A stretch of DNA of 64,000 nucleotides, from assembly GCA_907165135.1 (NCBI GenBank), contig OU015568.1:15511208-15575207 (forward strand). Reading direction: 5' to 3'. Shown here one piece after another: positions 11,382-46,400 of this stretch. Position numbers and translations under genes: made by a program. Positions within the stretch are counted from its first letter, which is position 1. Each line of letters starts with the position of its first letter. This DNA is from Oikopleura dioica (lineage: Eukaryota > Animalia > Chordata). The notes below the pieces were generated by a model. The model did no database searches, had not been told where the DNA came from, and saw nothing but the letters and a program-made list of their open reading frames with translations.

Positions 11382-15082
<3,701 letters not shown>

Positions 15083-38914: not shown

Positions 38915-41196
38915 CTTTTCTTTTCTGTTTTTCTGGTTTTTGGGAATTGAAAATATTTTTCTTCGGTTTTTACAAAAATATATTTTTCTTTCTTTTTGAA
39001 GATAAGTGCGTCGATTTTAGTCGTCCAAGGTTGAAATTGGAAGAGTAAATAAGTGAAAGTGATAAGTGAGTATTTTTGTTGAAAAACTCGTCCACGCTCG
39101 ACCTCTGTGTCCGAATGCGATGAGTCTAAATGAAAAATTTGGTGAGCAGCGTGGCTCTATTTATAAAGAAAAAAGTTATGGCTCACGCTCAGGCGCGCCC
39201 TCCTCAGAGTTTTACAGATCTTTCCGTTCAGGAATCAACAGGAAGCGCTGGGAAAACAGATTGTATTCAGTAAATCAAGGAGAATTATTCAGTATCTCTA
39301 AGGAAAAAATATCAATACGAAAAGGACCGATTTTGATCTTCAAAAATGACTTACGGGCTCTTATGTAATCAAGTGTATTTCAACCTGACATGGCCTTAAC
39401 CCTCTCACGTCCGGTGGTCATAAAATTGGTCAATAAAAAATTCGACCATTTGAAAAGTTATGACCTGTTATCACTCTTATTGTGACCTCTGTTTTAGAAA
39501 AAATGCGCTTCTTGTTTTAGAGAAGATATTTATTCAAAGGATTTATTGAGCGGAAAAATTTTTGAAAGAAATAGTCGAGGTTGGAGCCCAGCCAACCTCT
39601 TACAGAAGAAATTTTAAATATTCATCGATTAGAAGGAAAGGATTAAAGGAAGCAGGGGATAAGAATTGAATTGATTACAGTAATTGAAAGTCAGAAAGGG
39701 TTAGGTTTATGGTAAAAAAAAGAAGGAAATACTTGCGGAATGTAAAAAATACAAAAAGAGCGACAAGTTGAACTCATAAAAAACCCGGCTAAAATTTACC
39801 CAATGCTGGAAAAACAAGAAAGAAAAGGATTTGGAAAATAGCAGCCCTGGCCTCGTTAAAACATCAATCAAGTCTGTATGAGTGGTTTTCTTGACATTCA
39901 AAATATATTGAGCAATTAGCTACACAGTTTGAGTTATTACTGTGATATACCTGTAGAAACTGTATTGACAAATTACCCTATTGTAGTGTTATAAAAGGAT
40001 GAAGATATTTCAGTTGACGAAAAAAGGTGCAAATTGCCGTCCCGATTCGACATGAAATAAGCTCTCTACCAAGAGCTTTGAATTTATGAGACAACTAGAT
40101 CAAGTTTCATCTAATAATCCTCCTCATTTTATCTGTAATCTTATACATAAATGACCCTCTGGTCACTCCTACAGTTCATTCACTCTTATGAGTCCTGCTA
40201 TATTTACCTAAAATGACGTGTCAAACGTCAAATATACTAAAGATTACAGTCATAAGATTCAGTCGATTCATAGAATGACGCATCTTGAATTTCCAGTTCC
40301 AGTAAAAAATCAGTATAAATTTTGAACTCAAGGATCTATCACTTGATTCTACTAGAAAAGGGGTGAACGTGAAGATTATGCCTTGTCGTGTAATGCCGTT
40401 GACATACTGTCACACACAGGTCAGCACAGCGAGACCACCTGAGTAGCCACGTAAAAGTCTGGTACTTTTGCACGTCCTCTACTCAATCAATTTTACAAAT
40501 AAGGGCGTGAATAGCTTAAAACAACTTCATAGTCATAATATTATTGGATGATTAAGAATTACTCGATAAATTTATGTGCCAAGATTAGTCTGAATATAAT
40601 CAGAATATCGACTTTTATCGGGAAAACGCTCCATCATTCAAAGTTCAAATCATCATAAATCTGATCTGTTGTCACTGTTGAGAGCATTTAAGAATGCTGA
40701 CGGCCGGTAGCGAGAATACTAGAACAAGAAATACGGCCGTTTCTGTCCACGCGCTAACCAATTCCCAAATCATAAGTCAACACGTCTTAGTCTGGTAAAT
40801 TCTGCACCTCTACGTCACACACTCTCCAGCCTGGGCACTGCTCTTATCACATTTTCCTAATCTCTTCTTATTCAAAATTTCCGCATAGAACAAACAAAAG
40901 CTAGAAAAGGCATATAAGCGGTGGTAAAAAAAAAGATAAATTTCCGAGTTCAAATGAGGTCAATTTGAATCATTTTTTTTTATATTTAGGGTTTGATAGC
41001 TTTAATATTATTTTTTCACAATGAGCTGCATATAAACAAAGGATAAGTTGGACGGAGCGGTTGAACTTGAGCGAACAGAAATGTACAGAAGTAATCATCA
41101 GTTTAGCAATTTTTGTGGAAGGCAGAGGTAGCTTGAATAATTAATGACCTACAAAAGAAAATTAATAAGGGCTGGAGTTATATAAATTTTACTACC

Positions 41197-43385
41197 TTAT
41201 CTGAGAGTCCTCTCCTTTGGCCGAGGTCTCTGTTCTCGTCTGTCGACGCTTCTAAAGCCATTTTGCGTCTGGAACGAGCCCTGATGTCTATCATACGGGC
41301 TTGCCGACGGCGGTCGTTCTGTATTACTTCTTCCTACTGCTTTTGCTTTTCCGTATGTTTTAGGAGGCTCTGAGTATCGATTCTTCTGTCTTTCTGGCAC
41401 TTGGGCGCGGCCGAGAATTGCATCAAAGATCGGCTTGATTTCTCTGAAAGTCGGTCGATCTTCGCCCTTCTCGCTCCAGCACTCGTTCATCATTTGGTAA
41501 ATTTCATCGGGGCAGTGGGGCGGCTTGGCCAGTCGCTTCCCCGAGTCGAGGTAAGTGAGGATGTTTTGAGCTTCGACAGTTGGGTATGGAATGACAGCTC
41601 TGGAGAACACTTCCCAGCACGTGATTCCAAACGACCAGACGTCCGTTTTTTCGCTGAAAATTTTCCAGTTAGAAAAGCACAAAACAAAAAGCGCAATGCT
41701 GTGGCAGACAGGTGCTCATAATTCTAGCTTTAAATATATGACAAATTTAACGAGGTGCTAGTTAATCACTTACTTGTAATAGTTGTACTTTATACTTTCC
41801 GGGGCCATCCACTTGAGCGGAAGTTCAATCGTCGATTGCGCTCTAGAATGAATCGAATCATCGAAAAAAGTTCAAATGAGCAAATTCCTCACCTGTAGTA
41901 ATCGCGTTCGTTTGCGAAAACGCGGGAAAGGCCGAAATCAGAGACTTTGATGCTGCATTTACTGTCGACCATGCAGTTTCGGGCGGCGAGATCTCGGTGG
42001 ACGAATTTTCGCGAAGCCAGGTACGCCATTCCATCGCAAATCTCTTGGCAGAACTTGACGAGGTTGGAAACGGTGACGACGATTTTAGGATCGCGAAGAT
42101 AGGCACGGAGATCGCCCTTTTCGCAAAATGGAAGAAGAAGCATCGGAGATTGGTCGCCCTCACAGACTCCGATCAAGCTCAACACGTGCGGATGATTGAA
42201 TTCTGAATACCGTTTTAATATATTCGTCTGGCGAAACAATTATCATTCCAAATTCTCGAGTCGGAATACTTGCGCAATGGAAATTACCTTTCATCAGTAC
42301 TCCCTCGCGCATGAAGGATTCAAAGCTGGAACTGTCCGTGACGCACTTCAGGGATTTGATCGCGATCGCCTGTTTTCGACCATGATTGATCAAAGTTCCT
42401 CTGTAAACCGCTCCGAAATTTCCCTCTTTTAGGAGTTCGCCGATGGTCACTTTCTTTCGATCGATCAGGCAGGATTTCACGTCCCTAAAAGAAGGTTGAA
42501 AAAAATTTCATCATTCAATTCGGTACCTCGCGAGTTTTGGATCTTGAATGATATATTGAGATCGAGAAGCAGCGCTGATAAGAGAGTCGGATCGTTGATC
42601 CATGTACGGAGGTGGTGGGCCACTATTTCCAGTAGAGGAATTTGATTGTTGAGTCGACTGGGATCTGCTTGAAGAGCTAGTAAAGTTTTTATCGCCAATT
42701 CAAGAGCCTTTACGAGAGTGTACCTATGAACAATTGGCTTGAGTCCAACTTCAAATCTCCCGAAAGTTCCATTCGCTGAATGCCCCATTACATCTACATG
42801 CCCATGGTTAGCCAGAAGATCGTTTGTTTCTCCTTGGCCCTTTTCTTTTTTGTTCTGATTGTTTCGCCGCTTTCTCCAGCAGAAATATAAGACGCCGATG
42901 ATAAGTCCAGCGCTGAGAATGATCACAATGATCGGCCAAATTCGAAGTGTTGCTCCACTGGCATTATCGGGGCTGTAGGCCCTATCCAAAAAATCTGTTT
43001 CTGGGGCTCTGGTTGTTGTTGTCGTAGTAGTCGTCGTTGTAGGATTGATGTAGTTTGGCCAAAATTTGTTGAGACCGATGACATCTAACTCGAAGATTTC
43101 CCGCGCTTCCTCGTAGTTGCAAACTTCCTCCAAGCACTCTTGCTCAAGATTCCCCTCGCCGAATTCTTCCATTCCCGTGTTTGCTCGTCTACTTCTTGAG
43201 AGAAGAAAGCTCGCTGCCTCTTCTTTATTAATAAACACCATTTTGAAAGGTCCGATATCAACTAATCTGAAAAAGAGGGAATAAGGAAGGTTGATTTCAT
43301 GAAGAATTGATTGCAAGAATCCGGCAGAAGAAATACGTTAGAATAAGAAAAGGTATGAAGAAAATGGGAATGAATAATTTGAAAC
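41197..43385 (-). CDS. Gla-domain receptor tyrosine kinase (Gla-RTK), Met/TAM-like kinase (5' end uncertain)
   Basis: Propeptide VFINKEEAASFLLSRSRR, Gla domain ANTGMEEFGEGNLEQECLEEVCNYEEAREIFE..FW, poly-Thr stalk, TM IWPIIVIILSAGLIIGVLYFCW, kinase with EGNFGAVY, IAIK, HRDLAARN, DFG, KWMAPES, DVWSFG. Confidence 0.92.
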
Positions 43386-43424
43386 TTAGAAGAGTTTTCT
43401 ATAAAGAAAAGATGGTGGGTGTTT

Positions 43425-46400
43425 TTATGTTTCTTCGCGTAGACTTGGAAGCTCCAAAGTAGCTCCAAGGGAAGAAAGAAGGTCGAAGCCTCCATGAAGA
43501 ACGGTAAGCTTCGGATAGCCAAGGGAGAGAAGCCGCTCGGCAAAGGCCTGCCCACTGCGCGTATCTTTTCCAGCGACGACGATGATCCTGTTTCCACGCG
43601 AGGAGATGAGTTTTATGCTCGAAAGAGAGGGGCGCAGACTTGGGTTCGGAATTTCAGCTGTTGGATCTTCGAAAGAGCTTTCTGCAGGCAAATTTATTGC
43701 ACCAGGTAGCGTTCCAGTATTGAATTCCTCTTCTGGGCGACAATCGACAATCAGTAGCCGCTCTACTGATCCGATGCTTTCAATGTCATCGACGATTTCG
43801 AACTCTTCGCCAGTGAAATTGCCAATGAAAGTTGATGACCTGATTCTGTTCATTCGGCAGACATCTGATAACGAAATGATCGGTAGACGCTCCATTCGCC
43901 GAGCTTGGAGGTCTATGTCTTCTTTGTGAATAGACAGAAGCGAGGTATCTTCAAAGTCCGGCTGGTGAACTCGATAAGAGCAGCTTAGAGGAGTGTCTCG
44001 GTGGAGAATTGTACTTTGTGTGACAATGTCGTCTACGTCTATATCCGGCATATCTATTCAATAATGAAAATGTTATTGAAAAAAAATCATCACGTGACAA
44101 ACCTGAGAATGACAAGATGCAGTCGTTAAAGCTGAATGTCATCAGCTGTCTTTTCAGGCGGAGCATGATTGCAACTGCAATAAACAGCGGCAGCGATGAA
44201 TCATAAACCAGCAGTTTATCCCAGAGATGGAAGATCTTCTTGATGGGGAAGACGTGTGAAAACATTGTGAGGAACCACGGGATGGCGTACAGATCTGGCA
44301 CGAACGCCTGACCGTCCATATCGAGTAAGTGGTTGGCTAGTTCCGGGTCGTGATGGCAGATCAGCTGCTGGAAAACAGCGAGGTACTCCTGTTTTCGAGT
44401 TGTCAATCATTACGTAAAATTAAAAACATAGAAGACTATTCAAGAATAATTTTAACAACACTTTCCTGAATGACAGCCGCGTTGTCTCGCTGGAAAAGAC
44501 CATTCAAGTACTTCGGAATGAAATTCGACATGCTTGCATATGCCAAATCCTCGCGGTCGTAATGCAGGACTACAAAAGGCACAGTAAGAGAGTCCAGTCC
44601 TTGCCAATAAGTCAGCCCCGGGTTGGTAACAAGCCAGGCTTTGATCACACGCTTGAGCTTCCGGGCACCCTCAGGACTGGCAATCACTTCCAGATATTGA
44701 TGACATCGCGGGATGTCCACATCGATTTGCCTGTCAGTCTCTCTGATTGCGCATTTGTTGATGCGCTTGTACATTTCTCGCGTGTCGCCGGAAACTTCCA
44801 AAAGAGCGCTCCAAACATTGCTTCTCAAATTTGGCGGGATATCAATCTTCATTTGGATTTGTTGTTATTTTTTGCTAATGAAGTCGGCCTCACAAAGATC
44901 AAACGACAACGGAAATTTAAAAGATTGAAAGCGCCCGTTTGATGGGGAAATTAAAATTCATAATTAAAAAACCCTAACTTGGCCTCTTGAATGATCCTCT
45001 CGAGCGTATGAGGGTATCCGGACAAAAGGCGTCGGTAGATCAAAGTCCTCGAGAACTGGTAGATTATCGACGACTCTCGGATTGAAAGAGGCAGTCGTCG
45101 TTCTTCGTTGATCTGGCGAAGGGTTGGCGAGAGTTTAGACTGGTCAATATCGATTGAAATTACGGGATTGGCGGCGATTGTGTCGACTGACTGAAGCGTG
45201 CCCTCCAACACGGTGAGATCGATTTCCGTCTGAGAAAAAACGGGATTATTTGACAGATAAATATGCTCAAGCCCTCGAAAGTCTCTCTCGATGAACAAAT
45301 AATAATCAATTCATAATTCAGAGCGTATCATTCTTGACAACATCCTTTTATTAGTCCCGGAAGCAGAATCGAAACGACCTGATTTCATTGGACAGGTCGT
45401 TTCGCTTGAAAAGTGATAAAAAGGAAAATGAGTGTGCTCCGTTTACTCAGCAAATATTTTGTTAACACTTTCGGGAATTAGCGTTTTGTTTAAACATCGA
45501 TTTGGAGACTTCATGAGTTCTGTCTGCAGTATCAAAATCCTAAGTCTTCCTTGATTTCAGGGGGAAATTTAATTAGCGTTATTATGCCATAATTTGCCGC
45601 TTCTTTCATCCCTAATTATCCCGGGGAAGTCAAATTACCTGTTTATGCGAGTTTTCCTCCCCGGATCCTTGTCCATTGTCTCCGCCACTTGCGTGCGTAG
45701 AAGGGATGAGCCCGACTTTCGAAATCCCGACAGTTTTTTGGATCAATCCGCTTCGCTCCAGCTCGCTAAAAATCCCCGGTTAAGAAGTCTAATCGTCACC
45801 TTTTCAAGAGGATCCCTATCACTTCTATCAAAACTACAATTTTTAATGCGACACGCGCTGCCCGAAGGGGGGTCTCAACTTATTTTTTTAGATATTTTCG
45901 AAAAGGAATCGATTTTTTTCTAAAAGATTGCCCTTTTCGCCATTGCCGGCGCGGCGGGGAGGCGTTCTCACAGAATAAAGCTTATCAGATTTGTTAAATT
46001 AATCATTAGAACGCAGCAACACCCAGTAATTTGTATTATCGCGGGGTTGACTGGAATTACCGGTTATGCGAAAAAACGCTTTTGAAAACAACCCTTGTTA
46101 GCCAATTTTAAGGGTCAAGCTACTATCTTAATTTCACCCGGAAAACTAACCTGTTGAGTCCATTAGAAGAAAGCCTCCAAAAATAATAAGCATCATTATG
46201 CCCCAGTGCTTCTATGATATCTCTGAGTGAATGGTTCTCTGGAATGGCGACGTTGGAAACGTTCGAAAACAGGTTTATTTCCGGAAATTCGCTCTTCGGG
46301 CATTTCAGTAGCTCCAAAACTTCGGCAGCTGATGGGCGATCTCTGGGTCGATGACTGAATAATAAAAAGATGAGTGGAGCGTTATAATTTTTATCGTTGT

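What the first reader, a model, noticed from the sequence alone, without database searches (positions are those of the whole stretch)
41197..43260. Vitamin K-dependent Gla domain fused directly to a receptor tyrosine kinase
Seen: carboxylase-type propeptide, RR cleavage site, Gla domain, mucin-like Thr stalk, TM and an apparently active kinase (K, HRD and DFG intact; first Gly of the G-loop replaced, LKEGNFG). Known: vertebrate TAM receptors sense phosphatidylserine via separate Gla ligands (Gas6, protein S), and Gla-RTKs are reported in ascidians. Inference: a ligand-receptor fusion able to sense PS-exposing membranes directly; its retention in a gene-loss-prone larvacean implies a working vitamin K cycle.
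Basis: partly seen in the sequence, partly recalled or inferred. Interest (0 to 1): 0.7.

Follow-up and report, generated by a model that had tools for sequence, protein, structure and literature searches.

The report
Larvacean Gla-domain receptor tyrosine kinase
This Oikopleura dioica gene really does join a vitamin K-type Gla domain, through one membrane span, to a tyrosine kinase. It is the larvacean counterpart of the Gla-RTK already known from sea squirts, so it is a sound but not new kind of receptor.

Summary
On the minus strand, 43266-41196, lies a six-coding-exon gene of about 566 codons. It encodes a carboxylase-type propeptide, an RSRR cleavage site, a Gla domain (Pfam 55.9 bits), a Thr-rich stalk, one membrane span, a PPPPY juxtamembrane motif and a tyrosine-kinase domain with all catalytic residues.

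RNA reads place the Oikopleura spliced leader 25 nt before the ATG. The protein therefore starts at the propeptide, with no signal peptide, as vertebrate PRRG1/TMG1 does.

Two introns are confirmed by transcript contigs. The others rest on GT-AG sites, on comparison with a second O. dioica lineage, and on exact collinearity with a full-length leader-capped cDNA of another larvacean (P0166).

The closest named relative is Halocynthia roretzi Gla-RTK (Q8T6I3). The same architecture occurs in Styela, Clavelina, Ciona and Phallusia. The Gla-RTK kinases form one clade (97/92) separate from TAM and MET/RON, and its sister group is unresolved.

Strong purifying selection (pN 0.06-0.17, synonymous sites saturated) argues for function. 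Phosphatidylserine sensing, carboxylation and the presence of GGCX/VKOR were not tested.

Verdict: a new member of a known kind. The scan has noted other Gla-domain genes in this genome, but not this one.

The parts
43267..43269 (-). Spliced-leader trans-splice acceptor (cag); the mRNA body starts at 43266
   Evidence: Depth is 0 upstream. The same leader heads the cDNA L001.
43242..43266 (-). 5'UTR of 25 nt, with no ATG
   Evidence: Read in frame, the leader contains TGA and no ATG (my reading of the leader as seen).
43185..43241 (-). Start codon and carboxylase-recognition propeptide (residues 1-19, ending RSRR); no signal peptide
   Evidence: aligns with the factor X propeptide from factor X residue 24. 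A9, F12 and L13 are invariant in 12 Gla-RTKs; no N-terminal hydrophobic segment.
43050..43184 (-). Gla domain (residues 20-64)
   Evidence: Pfam PF00594, 55.9 bits; the Glu, Cys and Trp columns are invariant.
42942..43049 (-). Thr-rich stalk (residues 65-100, ten consecutive Thr, one N-A-S sequon)
   Evidence: The length varies between lineages.
42876..42941 (-). Single transmembrane segment (residues 101-122), followed by RKRR
   Evidence: the only window with Kyte-Doolittle above 1.6; it aligns with the membrane span of the ascidian Gla-RTKs.
42724..43241 (-). Coding part of exon 1
42677..42723 (-). Intron 1 (47 nt, GT..AG, phase 2)
   Evidence: splice sites; in the second lineage L003 the indels here are not multiples of 3, whereas those in the flanking exons are; exons 1 and 2 hit P0166 residues 1-163 and 165-212. 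No junction read was obtained.
42527..42676 (-). Exon 2, Ser-rich juxtamembrane region with the PPPPY motif at 42604-42618
   Evidence: pN 0.064. PPxY recurs in P0166, P0167, P0158 and P0161.
42485..42526 (-). Intron 2 (42 nt)
   Evidence: a contig of the metatranscriptome run X1 skips exactly these 42 bases.
42288..42484 (-). Exon 3: kinase N-lobe (LKEGNFG loop, AIAIK lysine, alpha-C Glu)
42203..42287 (-). Intron 3 (85 nt)
   Evidence: an X1 contig skips exactly these 85 bases.
41893..42202 (-). Exon 4: kinase core (HRDLAARN, DFG, DYY)
   Evidence: 121.9 bits; best solved relatives are MET (108 bits), RON (93), AXL (83.5) and MER (82.8).
41843..41892 (-). Intron 4 (50 nt, GT..AG)
   Evidence: exons 4 and 5 hit P0166 residues 281-382 and 384-405.
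41774..41842 (-). Exon 5: end of the activation loop (PLKWMAPES)
41654..41773 (-). Intron 5 (120 nt, GTAAGT..AG)
   Evidence: exons 5 and 6 hit P0166 residues 384-405 and 407-579.
41196..41653 (-). Exon 6: kinase C-lobe and basic C-terminal tail; stop TAA at 41197-41199
41149..41195 (-). 3'UTR intron (47 nt), starting one base after the stop codon
   Evidence: an X1 contig skips it. Loose ends of X6-X8 reads at 41186 agree.
40947..41148 (-). 3'UTR exon (its far end is not defined)
   Evidence: X1 record 1 covers it.

Best explanation
This is the Oikopleura dioica orthologue of the tunicate Gla-RTK. It is a single-pass receptor tyrosine kinase whose whole ectodomain is a vitamin K-type Gla domain on a short stalk.

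Shown here:
- The gene is expressed and trans-spliced to the spliced leader 25 nt before its ATG.
- The protein therefore begins with the carboxylase-recognition propeptide and has no cleavable signal peptide.
- The single membrane span is followed by a basic cluster.
- The cytoplasmic part carries a conserved PPPPY motif and a kinase domain with all catalytic residues.
- The gene is under strong purifying selection and belongs to a well-supported Gla-RTK kinase clade.

Inferred:
- The membrane span acts as a reverse signal-anchor that puts the acidic 100-residue N-terminus into the ER lumen.
- The propeptide docks gamma-glutamyl carboxylase, which converts about ten Glu to Gla.
- A furin-type protease cuts after RSRR.
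- At the cell surface the Ca2+-loaded Gla domain binds anionic phospholipid (phosphatidylserine) on an apposed or the cell's own membrane. This clusters the receptor and drives trans-phosphorylation of the DYY activation loop.
- The PPPPY motif recruits WW-domain proteins, as it does in PRRG proteins.
For: Domains and motifs.

Spliced leader at the 5' end in RNA runs X6 and X7, and introns 2, 3 and the 3'UTR intron in transcript contigs.

Full-length larvacean cDNA L001: it begins with the template-switch remnant, the full 40-nt leader and an in-frame upstream stop. It encodes Gla, membrane span and kinase in one ORF (P0166) with no signal peptide.

Collinearity: each window exon hits P0166 in consecutive positions, leaving one residue per split codon (tblastn).

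Second O. dioica lineage (L003): exon indels are all multiples of 3 and intron indels are not. pS is 0.72-0.84 against pN 0.06-0.17.

Named homologues: Halocynthia Q8T6I3, plus Styela, Clavelina, Ciona and Phallusia proteins, all with Gla plus PK_Tyr.

Kinase clade: support 97/92.

Precedent for starting at the propeptide with a PPxY tail: TMG1/PRRG1 of gar, caecilian and elephant shark. PRRG PPxY motifs bind YAP, TAZ, NEDD4 and MAGI (PMC3764795).
Against: - No read or contig of this lineage spans the exon 1-exon 2, exon 4-5 or exon 5-6 junctions. The bulk RNA runs come from a lineage only 90-95% alike and cover only conserved stretches.
- GGCX and VKOR were not looked for, and no carboxylation, lipid-binding or kinase data exist.
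- The first glycine of the nucleotide-binding loop is replaced. This holds in all family members, which argues for tolerance rather than decay.
- The stalk is short, about 36 residues here and about 12 in ascidians. Reaching another cell's membrane would therefore need very close contact.
- The Gla domain is no closer to PRRG than to clotting-factor Gla domains.
Confidence: 0.75

Rival explanations
1. Same gene and same architecture, but the Gla domain does not sense phosphatidylserine on other cells. It would instead bind a protein or matrix ligand, mediate Ca2+-dependent self-association, or lie on the cell's own outer leaflet and report the cell's own lipid scrambling.
For: The stalk is very short in ascidian members, about 12 residues. 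From my own knowledge, Gla domains also bind proteins; protein C Gla binding EPCR is one example. From my own knowledge, the extracellular ligands of the similarly built PRRG proteins remain unidentified; what PMC3764795 shows is their cytosolic WW-domain partners. The hydrophobic positions 4, 5 and 8 of the omega loop read G, M, F here, so one bulky residue is missing.
Against: All Ca2+-coordinating Glu positions and the aromatic stack are invariant across the family. That fits the canonical membrane-binding fold.
Confidence: 0.3
2. The kinase is a pseudokinase or scaffold, because the first glycine of the GxGxxG loop is lost.
For: The loop reads LKEGNFG here and (T/S)SGNFG in ascidians.
Against: The Lys, alpha-C Glu, HRDLAARN, DFG, DYY, WMAPE and subdomain XI Arg are all intact. 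pN is about 0.10 over the N-lobe while synonymous sites are saturated. The second and third glycines are kept.
Confidence: 0.07
3. The Gla-like domain works uncarboxylated because the larvacean has lost the vitamin K cycle.
For: GGCX/VKOR were not checked. From general knowledge, larvaceans have lost many genes.
Against: The propeptide residues that only make sense as a carboxylase docking site (A9, F12, L13) are invariant from ascidians to larvaceans. The scan has noted several further Gla-domain genes in this genome (unverified by me).
Confidence: 0.05
4. Gene-model artefact: a PRRG-like Gla-membrane gene and a separate kinase gene lie head to tail on two transcripts.
For: No junction read for intron 1 in this lineage.
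Against: One cDNA carries both halves in a related larvacean, and its junction region (VHSSSSRSQ) matches the predicted exon 1-exon 2 join. One search listed no second leader site (not all loose ends were shown); polyadenylation between the exons was not examined. Exon 2 is conserved in frame. Ascidian proteins have the same architecture.
Confidence: 0.03

Closest known systems
Halocynthia roretzi Gla-RTK ('Gla-like protein', Q8T6I3 / AAL74247.2; Wang et al. 2003, J Thromb Haemost 1:118, pmid 12871548) and its ascidian orthologues (Styela, Clavelina, Ciona, Phallusia)
   Same: Propeptide, Gla domain, one membrane span and a tyrosine kinase. No signal peptide. The first G-loop glycine is replaced. 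HRDLAARNCMV, DFGLSR..DYY and PLKWMxPES motifs are shared. Same kinase clade.
   Different: - Identity is only 33-55% per exon.
- The larvacean has a furin-type RSRR site, where ascidians have KLLK/RRLQ.
- It has a longer Thr-rich stalk and a longer Ser-rich juxtamembrane segment with PPPPY, which Ciona and Halocynthia lack.
Vertebrate PRRG1/TMG1 (transmembrane Gla proteins)
   Same: The protein begins at the propeptide without a signal peptide. Gla domain, short stalk, single membrane span and cytoplasmic PPxY motif are shared (PMC3764795).
   Different: PRRGs have a short tail without a kinase. The Gla domain here is not specifically closest to PRRG (51.6 bits for TMG1 against 55-87 for clotting-factor-like proteins).
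TAM receptors (AXL, MER, TYRO3) with their Gla ligands Gas6 and protein S
   Same: Kinase of the same MET/RON/TAM superclade, with a DFGLS...DYYR activation loop. Functionally, a Gla domain is coupled to a tyrosine kinase.
   Different: - No Ig or FN3 ectodomain.
- KWMAPES instead of the TAM KW(I/L)A(I/L)ES signature.
- The kinase falls outside the TAM clade, which has 100/99 support.
- The Gla module is in cis and lacks EGF/LG domains.
MET/RON receptors
   Same: Best solved-structure matches for the kinase core: MET 108 bits, RON 93. HRDLAARNCM motif shared.
   Different: No Sema, PSI or IPT ectodomain. Not nested within MET/RON in the tree.

Membership tests
Tunicate Gla-RTK | N-terminal carboxylase propeptide plus Gla domain above the Pfam threshold | tested here: met
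   (55.9 bits against 27).
Tunicate Gla-RTK | Single membrane span shortly after the Gla domain, with no other ectodomain module | tested here: met
   The leader acceptor lies 25 nt before the ATG, which excludes upstream coding exons.
Tunicate Gla-RTK | Cytoplasmic tyrosine-kinase domain belonging to the Gla-RTK kinase clade | tested here: met
   PF07714 on exons 3-6. The best hits of each exon outside O. dioica are Gla-RTK members. The orthologue P0166 lies in the clade with 97/92 support. The window's exons were not joined and so were not themselves placed in the tree.
Tunicate Gla-RTK | Gla and kinase on one mRNA | tested here: inconclusive
   Introns 2 and 3 are seen spliced. The exon 1-exon 2 join is supported only by comparison and by the one-piece cDNA of a related larvacean.
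TAM receptor tyrosine kinases | Ig-like and FN3 ectodomain | tested here: not met
   the ectodomain is the Gla domain and stalk only.
TAM receptor tyrosine kinases | KW(I/L)A(I/L)ES kinase signature (from my own knowledge) and placement inside the TAM clade | tested here: not met
   The sequence reads KWMAPES. The TAM clade (100/99) excludes Gla-RTKs. A sister relation is not rejected (p-AU 0.335).
PRRG/TMG transmembrane Gla proteins | Propeptide, Gla domain, membrane span and a short proline-rich tail with PPxY, without an enzymatic domain | tested here: not met
   The N-terminal half and PPPPY match, but the tail carries a full kinase domain.
MET/RON receptors | Sema-PSI-IPT ectodomain | tested here: not met
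   none found.
Vitamin K-dependent proteins (functional class) | Glu residues are actually gamma-carboxylated by GGCX, with VKOR recycling | not testable with these tools
Only indirect support: invariant propeptide and Glu columns and purifying selection.
Active protein tyrosine kinases | Catalytic Lys, alpha-C Glu, HRD, Asn, DFG and APE present | tested here: met
   Only the first G-loop Gly is replaced, in the whole family. Enzymatic activity was not tested.

The most novel reading that the evidence does not exclude
Gla-RTKs are PRRG1-type, signal-peptide-less (type III) Gla membrane proteins that acquired a MET/TAM-superfamily kinase in the tunicate stem lineage. They act as one-piece, vitamin K-dependent phosphatidylserine receptors, the tunicate alternative to the two-piece Gas6-TAM system. 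WW-domain partners would read out the conserved PPxY motif.
Probability: 0.3. Interest if true: 0.6.

Novelty: new member of a known kind. Interest (0 to 1): 0.35.

Why it matters
The finding extends the Gla-RTK family from ascidians to larvaceans. The family therefore dates to the common ancestor of these tunicate groups, and it has been kept under strong constraint in a genome known for gene loss.

It also gives a compact model (about 566 residues, a 2.1-kb gene) in a transparent, fast-breeding animal for three questions:
- What a membrane-tethered Gla domain senses.
- How a Gla protein enters the secretory pathway without a signal peptide.
- Whether PRRG-type PPxY signalling and tyrosine-kinase signalling are coupled.

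It does not change what is known about the kind of receptor.

Tried and rejected
1. Signal-peptide exon. I looked between the upstream gene's stop (43425) and exon 1. A hydrophobic frame exists at about 43300-43400 but has no ATG. The short ORF beginning MKSTF is out of frame, and the leader acceptor removes all of it. In a sister lineage an ORF caller extends the protein upstream (P0002, P0151). That ATG is missing in L003 and out of frame here, so I treat the extension as an artefact.

2. Annotated full-length O. dioica protein. Word searches with P0066 and P0166 listed none. The region search was set too strict (E 1e-5 against 5.8 billion sequences) and returned only the query.

3. Papers. 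'Gla-RTK' and 'Oikopleura + gamma-carboxyglutamic' gave nothing. Kulman et al. 2006 (PMC1635082) is not held. Coban et al. 2022 (PMC9643190) name O. dioica E4WZI2 as the orthologue of a Ciona Gla protein, and a figure legend lists PKinase_Tyr. Neither the text nor the supplement gives the architecture. This gene may therefore already sit in UniProt unremarked.

4. Resolving TAM against MET as sister group. Neither is rejected.

5. The 41226-41317 'joint' in the RNA reads. It is a diverged stretch of the other lineage, not an intron (loose ends).

6. Joined steps left out. All searches were made exon by exon by reference, and the natural protein P0166 stands in for the larvacean lineage in the tree.

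Full report
**What is there.**
Reading 41150-43700 on the minus strand in three frames gives a gene with six coding exons. In window coordinates these are:
- E1 43266-42724, with the ATG at 43241
- E2 42676-42527
- E3 42484-42288
- E4 42202-41893
- E5 41842-41774
- E6 41653-41196, with the stop TAA at 41199-41197

The five coding introns are 47, 42, 85, 50 and 120 nt long. All are GT..AG, and their phases restore the frame. The product would be about 566 residues.

**Domains.**
- Pfam finds Gla in E1: 55.9 bits against a cut-off of 27, residues 24-64.
- PK_Tyr_Ser-Thr matches E3, E4, E5 and E6 at consecutive profile positions 2-56, 58-158, 162-180 and 184-255. The four exons therefore make up one kinase domain.
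- E1 residues 2-64 align with the factor X propeptide plus Gla domain, starting at factor X residue 24, which is just after its signal peptide.
- The mature N-terminus would follow RSRR. Glu occupies Gla positions 6, 7, 14, 16, 19, 20, 25, 26, 29 and 32. The Cys17-Cys22 pair and the F-W-x-x-Y stack are present.
- After the Gla domain come ten Thr, an N-A-S sequon, the only hydrophobic segment of the protein (residues 101-122) and RKRR.
- The kinase has AIAIK, the alpha-C Glu, HRDLAARN, DFG, DYY, PLKWMAPES and DVWSFG. Only the first glycine of the nucleotide loop is replaced, giving LKEGNFG.

**Transcript evidence.**
Three bulk oligo-dT RNA runs labelled with the same species (X6-X8) come from a lineage only 90-95% alike, so they cover only the conserved stretches. 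They still give three results.

The leader's last CAG coincides with the genomic acceptor cag at 43269-43267, so the mRNA body starts at 43266, 25 nt before the ATG.
- Read in frame, the leader contains TGA and no ATG (the leader sequence as seen). The protein therefore begins at the propeptide, with no signal peptide.
- Contigs of a marine metatranscriptome (X1, 94-100% alike) skip exactly 42485-42526 and 42203-42287. This confirms introns 2 and 3. They also skip a 47-nt intron (41149-41195) that begins one base after the stop codon.

No read or contig spans introns 1, 4 or 5.

**Comparative support for the remaining junctions.**
L003 is a 960-bp genomic contig of another O. dioica lineage. 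It covers E1, intron 1, E2, intron 2 and the start of E3.
- All exon indels are multiples of three. The intron indels are not.
- Synonymous sites are saturated (pS 0.72-0.84), while pN is 0.17 in E1, 0.105 in propeptide plus Gla, 0.064 in E2 and 0.10 in the E3 part.

P0166 is a 583-residue protein encoded on two independent metatranscriptome contigs, L001 and L002.
- L001 begins with a template-switch remnant and the complete 40-nt Oikopleura leader. It has an in-frame TGA at 65-67 and the ATG at 98. It is thus a full-length larvacean cDNA carrying Gla, membrane span and kinase in one ORF, again without a signal peptide.
- The window's exon pieces hit P0166 at residues 1-163, 165-212, 216-279, 281-382, 384-405 and 407-579. 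At four of the five junctions exactly one residue is left for the split codon; between exons 2 and 3 three residues are left.
- Its sequence across the first junction (VHSSSSRSQ) equals my predicted join.

I rate separate transcripts at about 3%.

**Relatives.**
A full-library search with E1 found 849 Gla proteins. Among the 150 listed I scanned ten long ones, and one had Gla plus a kinase: P0066. P0066 is Halocynthia roretzi 'Gla-like protein', Q8T6I3 / AAL74247.2. This is the Gla-RTK of Wang et al. 2003 (pmid 12871548; the citation is seen in PMC6570729; the paper's content is from my memory).

Searching with P0066 found the same Pfam architecture in:
- Styela clava, Clavelina lepadiformis, Ciona intestinalis and Phallusia mammillata, which NCBI mostly names 'hepatocyte growth factor receptor-like';
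- eight unnamed assembly, metatranscriptome or catalogue proteins.

No named protein with this architecture came from outside tunicates.

**Kinase tree.**
I built a tree of 46 kinase domains.
- The Gla-RTKs form one clade with 97/92 support. A larvacean branch (P0166, P0172, P0167) is sister to the ascidian branch.
- TAM (100/99) and MET/RON form separate groups, and the three-way relation is open.
- AU tests reject neither Gla-RTK+TAM (p 0.335) nor Gla-RTK+MET/RON (p 0.233).
- Among solved structures the kinase core is closest to MET (108 bits), then RON, AXL and MER.

P0166 stands in for the larvacean lineage in the tree.

1. There is no signal peptide. This is a family trait. Halocynthia, Ciona, P0158 and P0161 (which has a stop two codons before its ATG) also start at or just before the propeptide. 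Only P0167 has a classical signal peptide.
2. Vertebrate TMG1/PRRG1 of gar, caecilian and elephant shark start the same way (query residues 2-3 align with their residues 4-5). They continue with Gla, a short stalk, a membrane span and PPxY motifs.
3. The juxtamembrane exon 2 carries PPPPY. It is conserved in both O. dioica lineages and present as PPxY in P0166, P0167, P0158 and P0161, but absent from Ciona and Halocynthia. In PRRG4 and PRRG2 such motifs bind YAP, TAZ, NEDD4 and MAGI proteins (PMC3764795).

The extracellular-to-juxtamembrane half therefore looks like a PRRG1-type protein rather than a piece of Gas6. It has no EGF or laminin-G modules.

**How it most likely works.**
The shown steps are: expression, leader trans-splicing, architecture, intact catalytic motifs and selective constraint.

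The inferred steps are:
- The membrane span, with an acidic N-terminal side and a basic C-terminal side, acts as a reverse signal-anchor.
- The propeptide (A9, F12 and L13 invariant) docks the carboxylase.
- A furin-type protease cuts at RSRR. Ascidian members lack the dibasic site.
- The Ca2+-loaded Gla domain binds anionic lipid and clusters the receptor.
- The DYY activation loop is phosphorylated in trans.
- PPPPY recruits WW-domain proteins.

The short stalk makes binding in cis, or across very tight contacts, as plausible as sensing of distant apoptotic cells. A protein ligand cannot be excluded.

**Vitamin K cycle.**
I could not test for GGCX or VKOR. No query sequence was available from any tool, and the protein searches were exhausted. 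Indirect support comes from the invariant propeptide and Glu columns, from purifying selection, and from three other Gla-domain genes that earlier notes of this scan report in the same genome. I did not check those notes.

**Novelty.**
The kind of receptor has been known since 2003 in ascidians. Its presence in a larvacean was expected but, as far as I could find, has not been described. Coban et al. 2022 (PMC9643190) probably touched the Norwegian-strain protein (E4WZI2) without comment.

New here:
- the leader-defined 5' end, which proves the absence of a signal peptide;
- the PRRG1-like organisation with a PPxY motif;
- the monophyly of Gla-RTK kinases outside TAM and MET/RON.

Verdict: a real, intact and ordinary-for-tunicates gene, and a new member of a known kind.

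Noticed in passing
window 43425-44406 (minus strand): The upstream neighbour on the same strand encodes a RabGAP-TBC domain followed by a rhodanese domain (TBC1D23-like). Its stop at 43425 lies only 158 nt from the Gla-RTK leader acceptor, so the two genes may form an operon.
   Followed up: partly
window 41149-41195 (minus strand): A 47-nt GT..AG intron begins one base after the stop codon. It is spliced out in a metatranscriptome contig, and reads of three RNA runs are consistent with it.
   Followed up: partly
window 43010-43045; L003; P0151: The Thr-run of the stalk varies in length and composition between O. dioica lineages (10 Thr here, 11 in P0151, a T/P mix in L003). Reads show 'goes back' joints and extra ACN-type repeats here.
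   Followed up: no
window 43270-43300; P0002, P0151: In a closely related lineage an upstream ATG is in frame and ORF callers add a 19-residue, weakly hydrophobic extension. In this window that ATG is out of frame, in L003 it is absent, and trans-splicing removes it.
   Followed up: yes
alignment A1: Ascidian Gla-RTKs have KLLK or RRLQ instead of a dibasic furin-type site before the Gla domain. Larvacean-branch members have RSRR, HKR or RRRR. The propeptide may therefore stay attached in ascidians.
   Followed up: no
P0005 and P0004: P0004 and P0005 are further unnamed Gla-domain ORFs; P0005 also has a membrane span. Their propeptides resemble the larvacean type, and intron-like insertions interrupt the reading frame. 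They suggest additional Gla-membrane genes or orthologues in other larvacean species.
   Followed up: no
window 11894-12130: Weak kinase hits for all Gla-RTK queries fall in the PRP4-kinase gene, which another finding of this scan has already noted.
   Followed up: no
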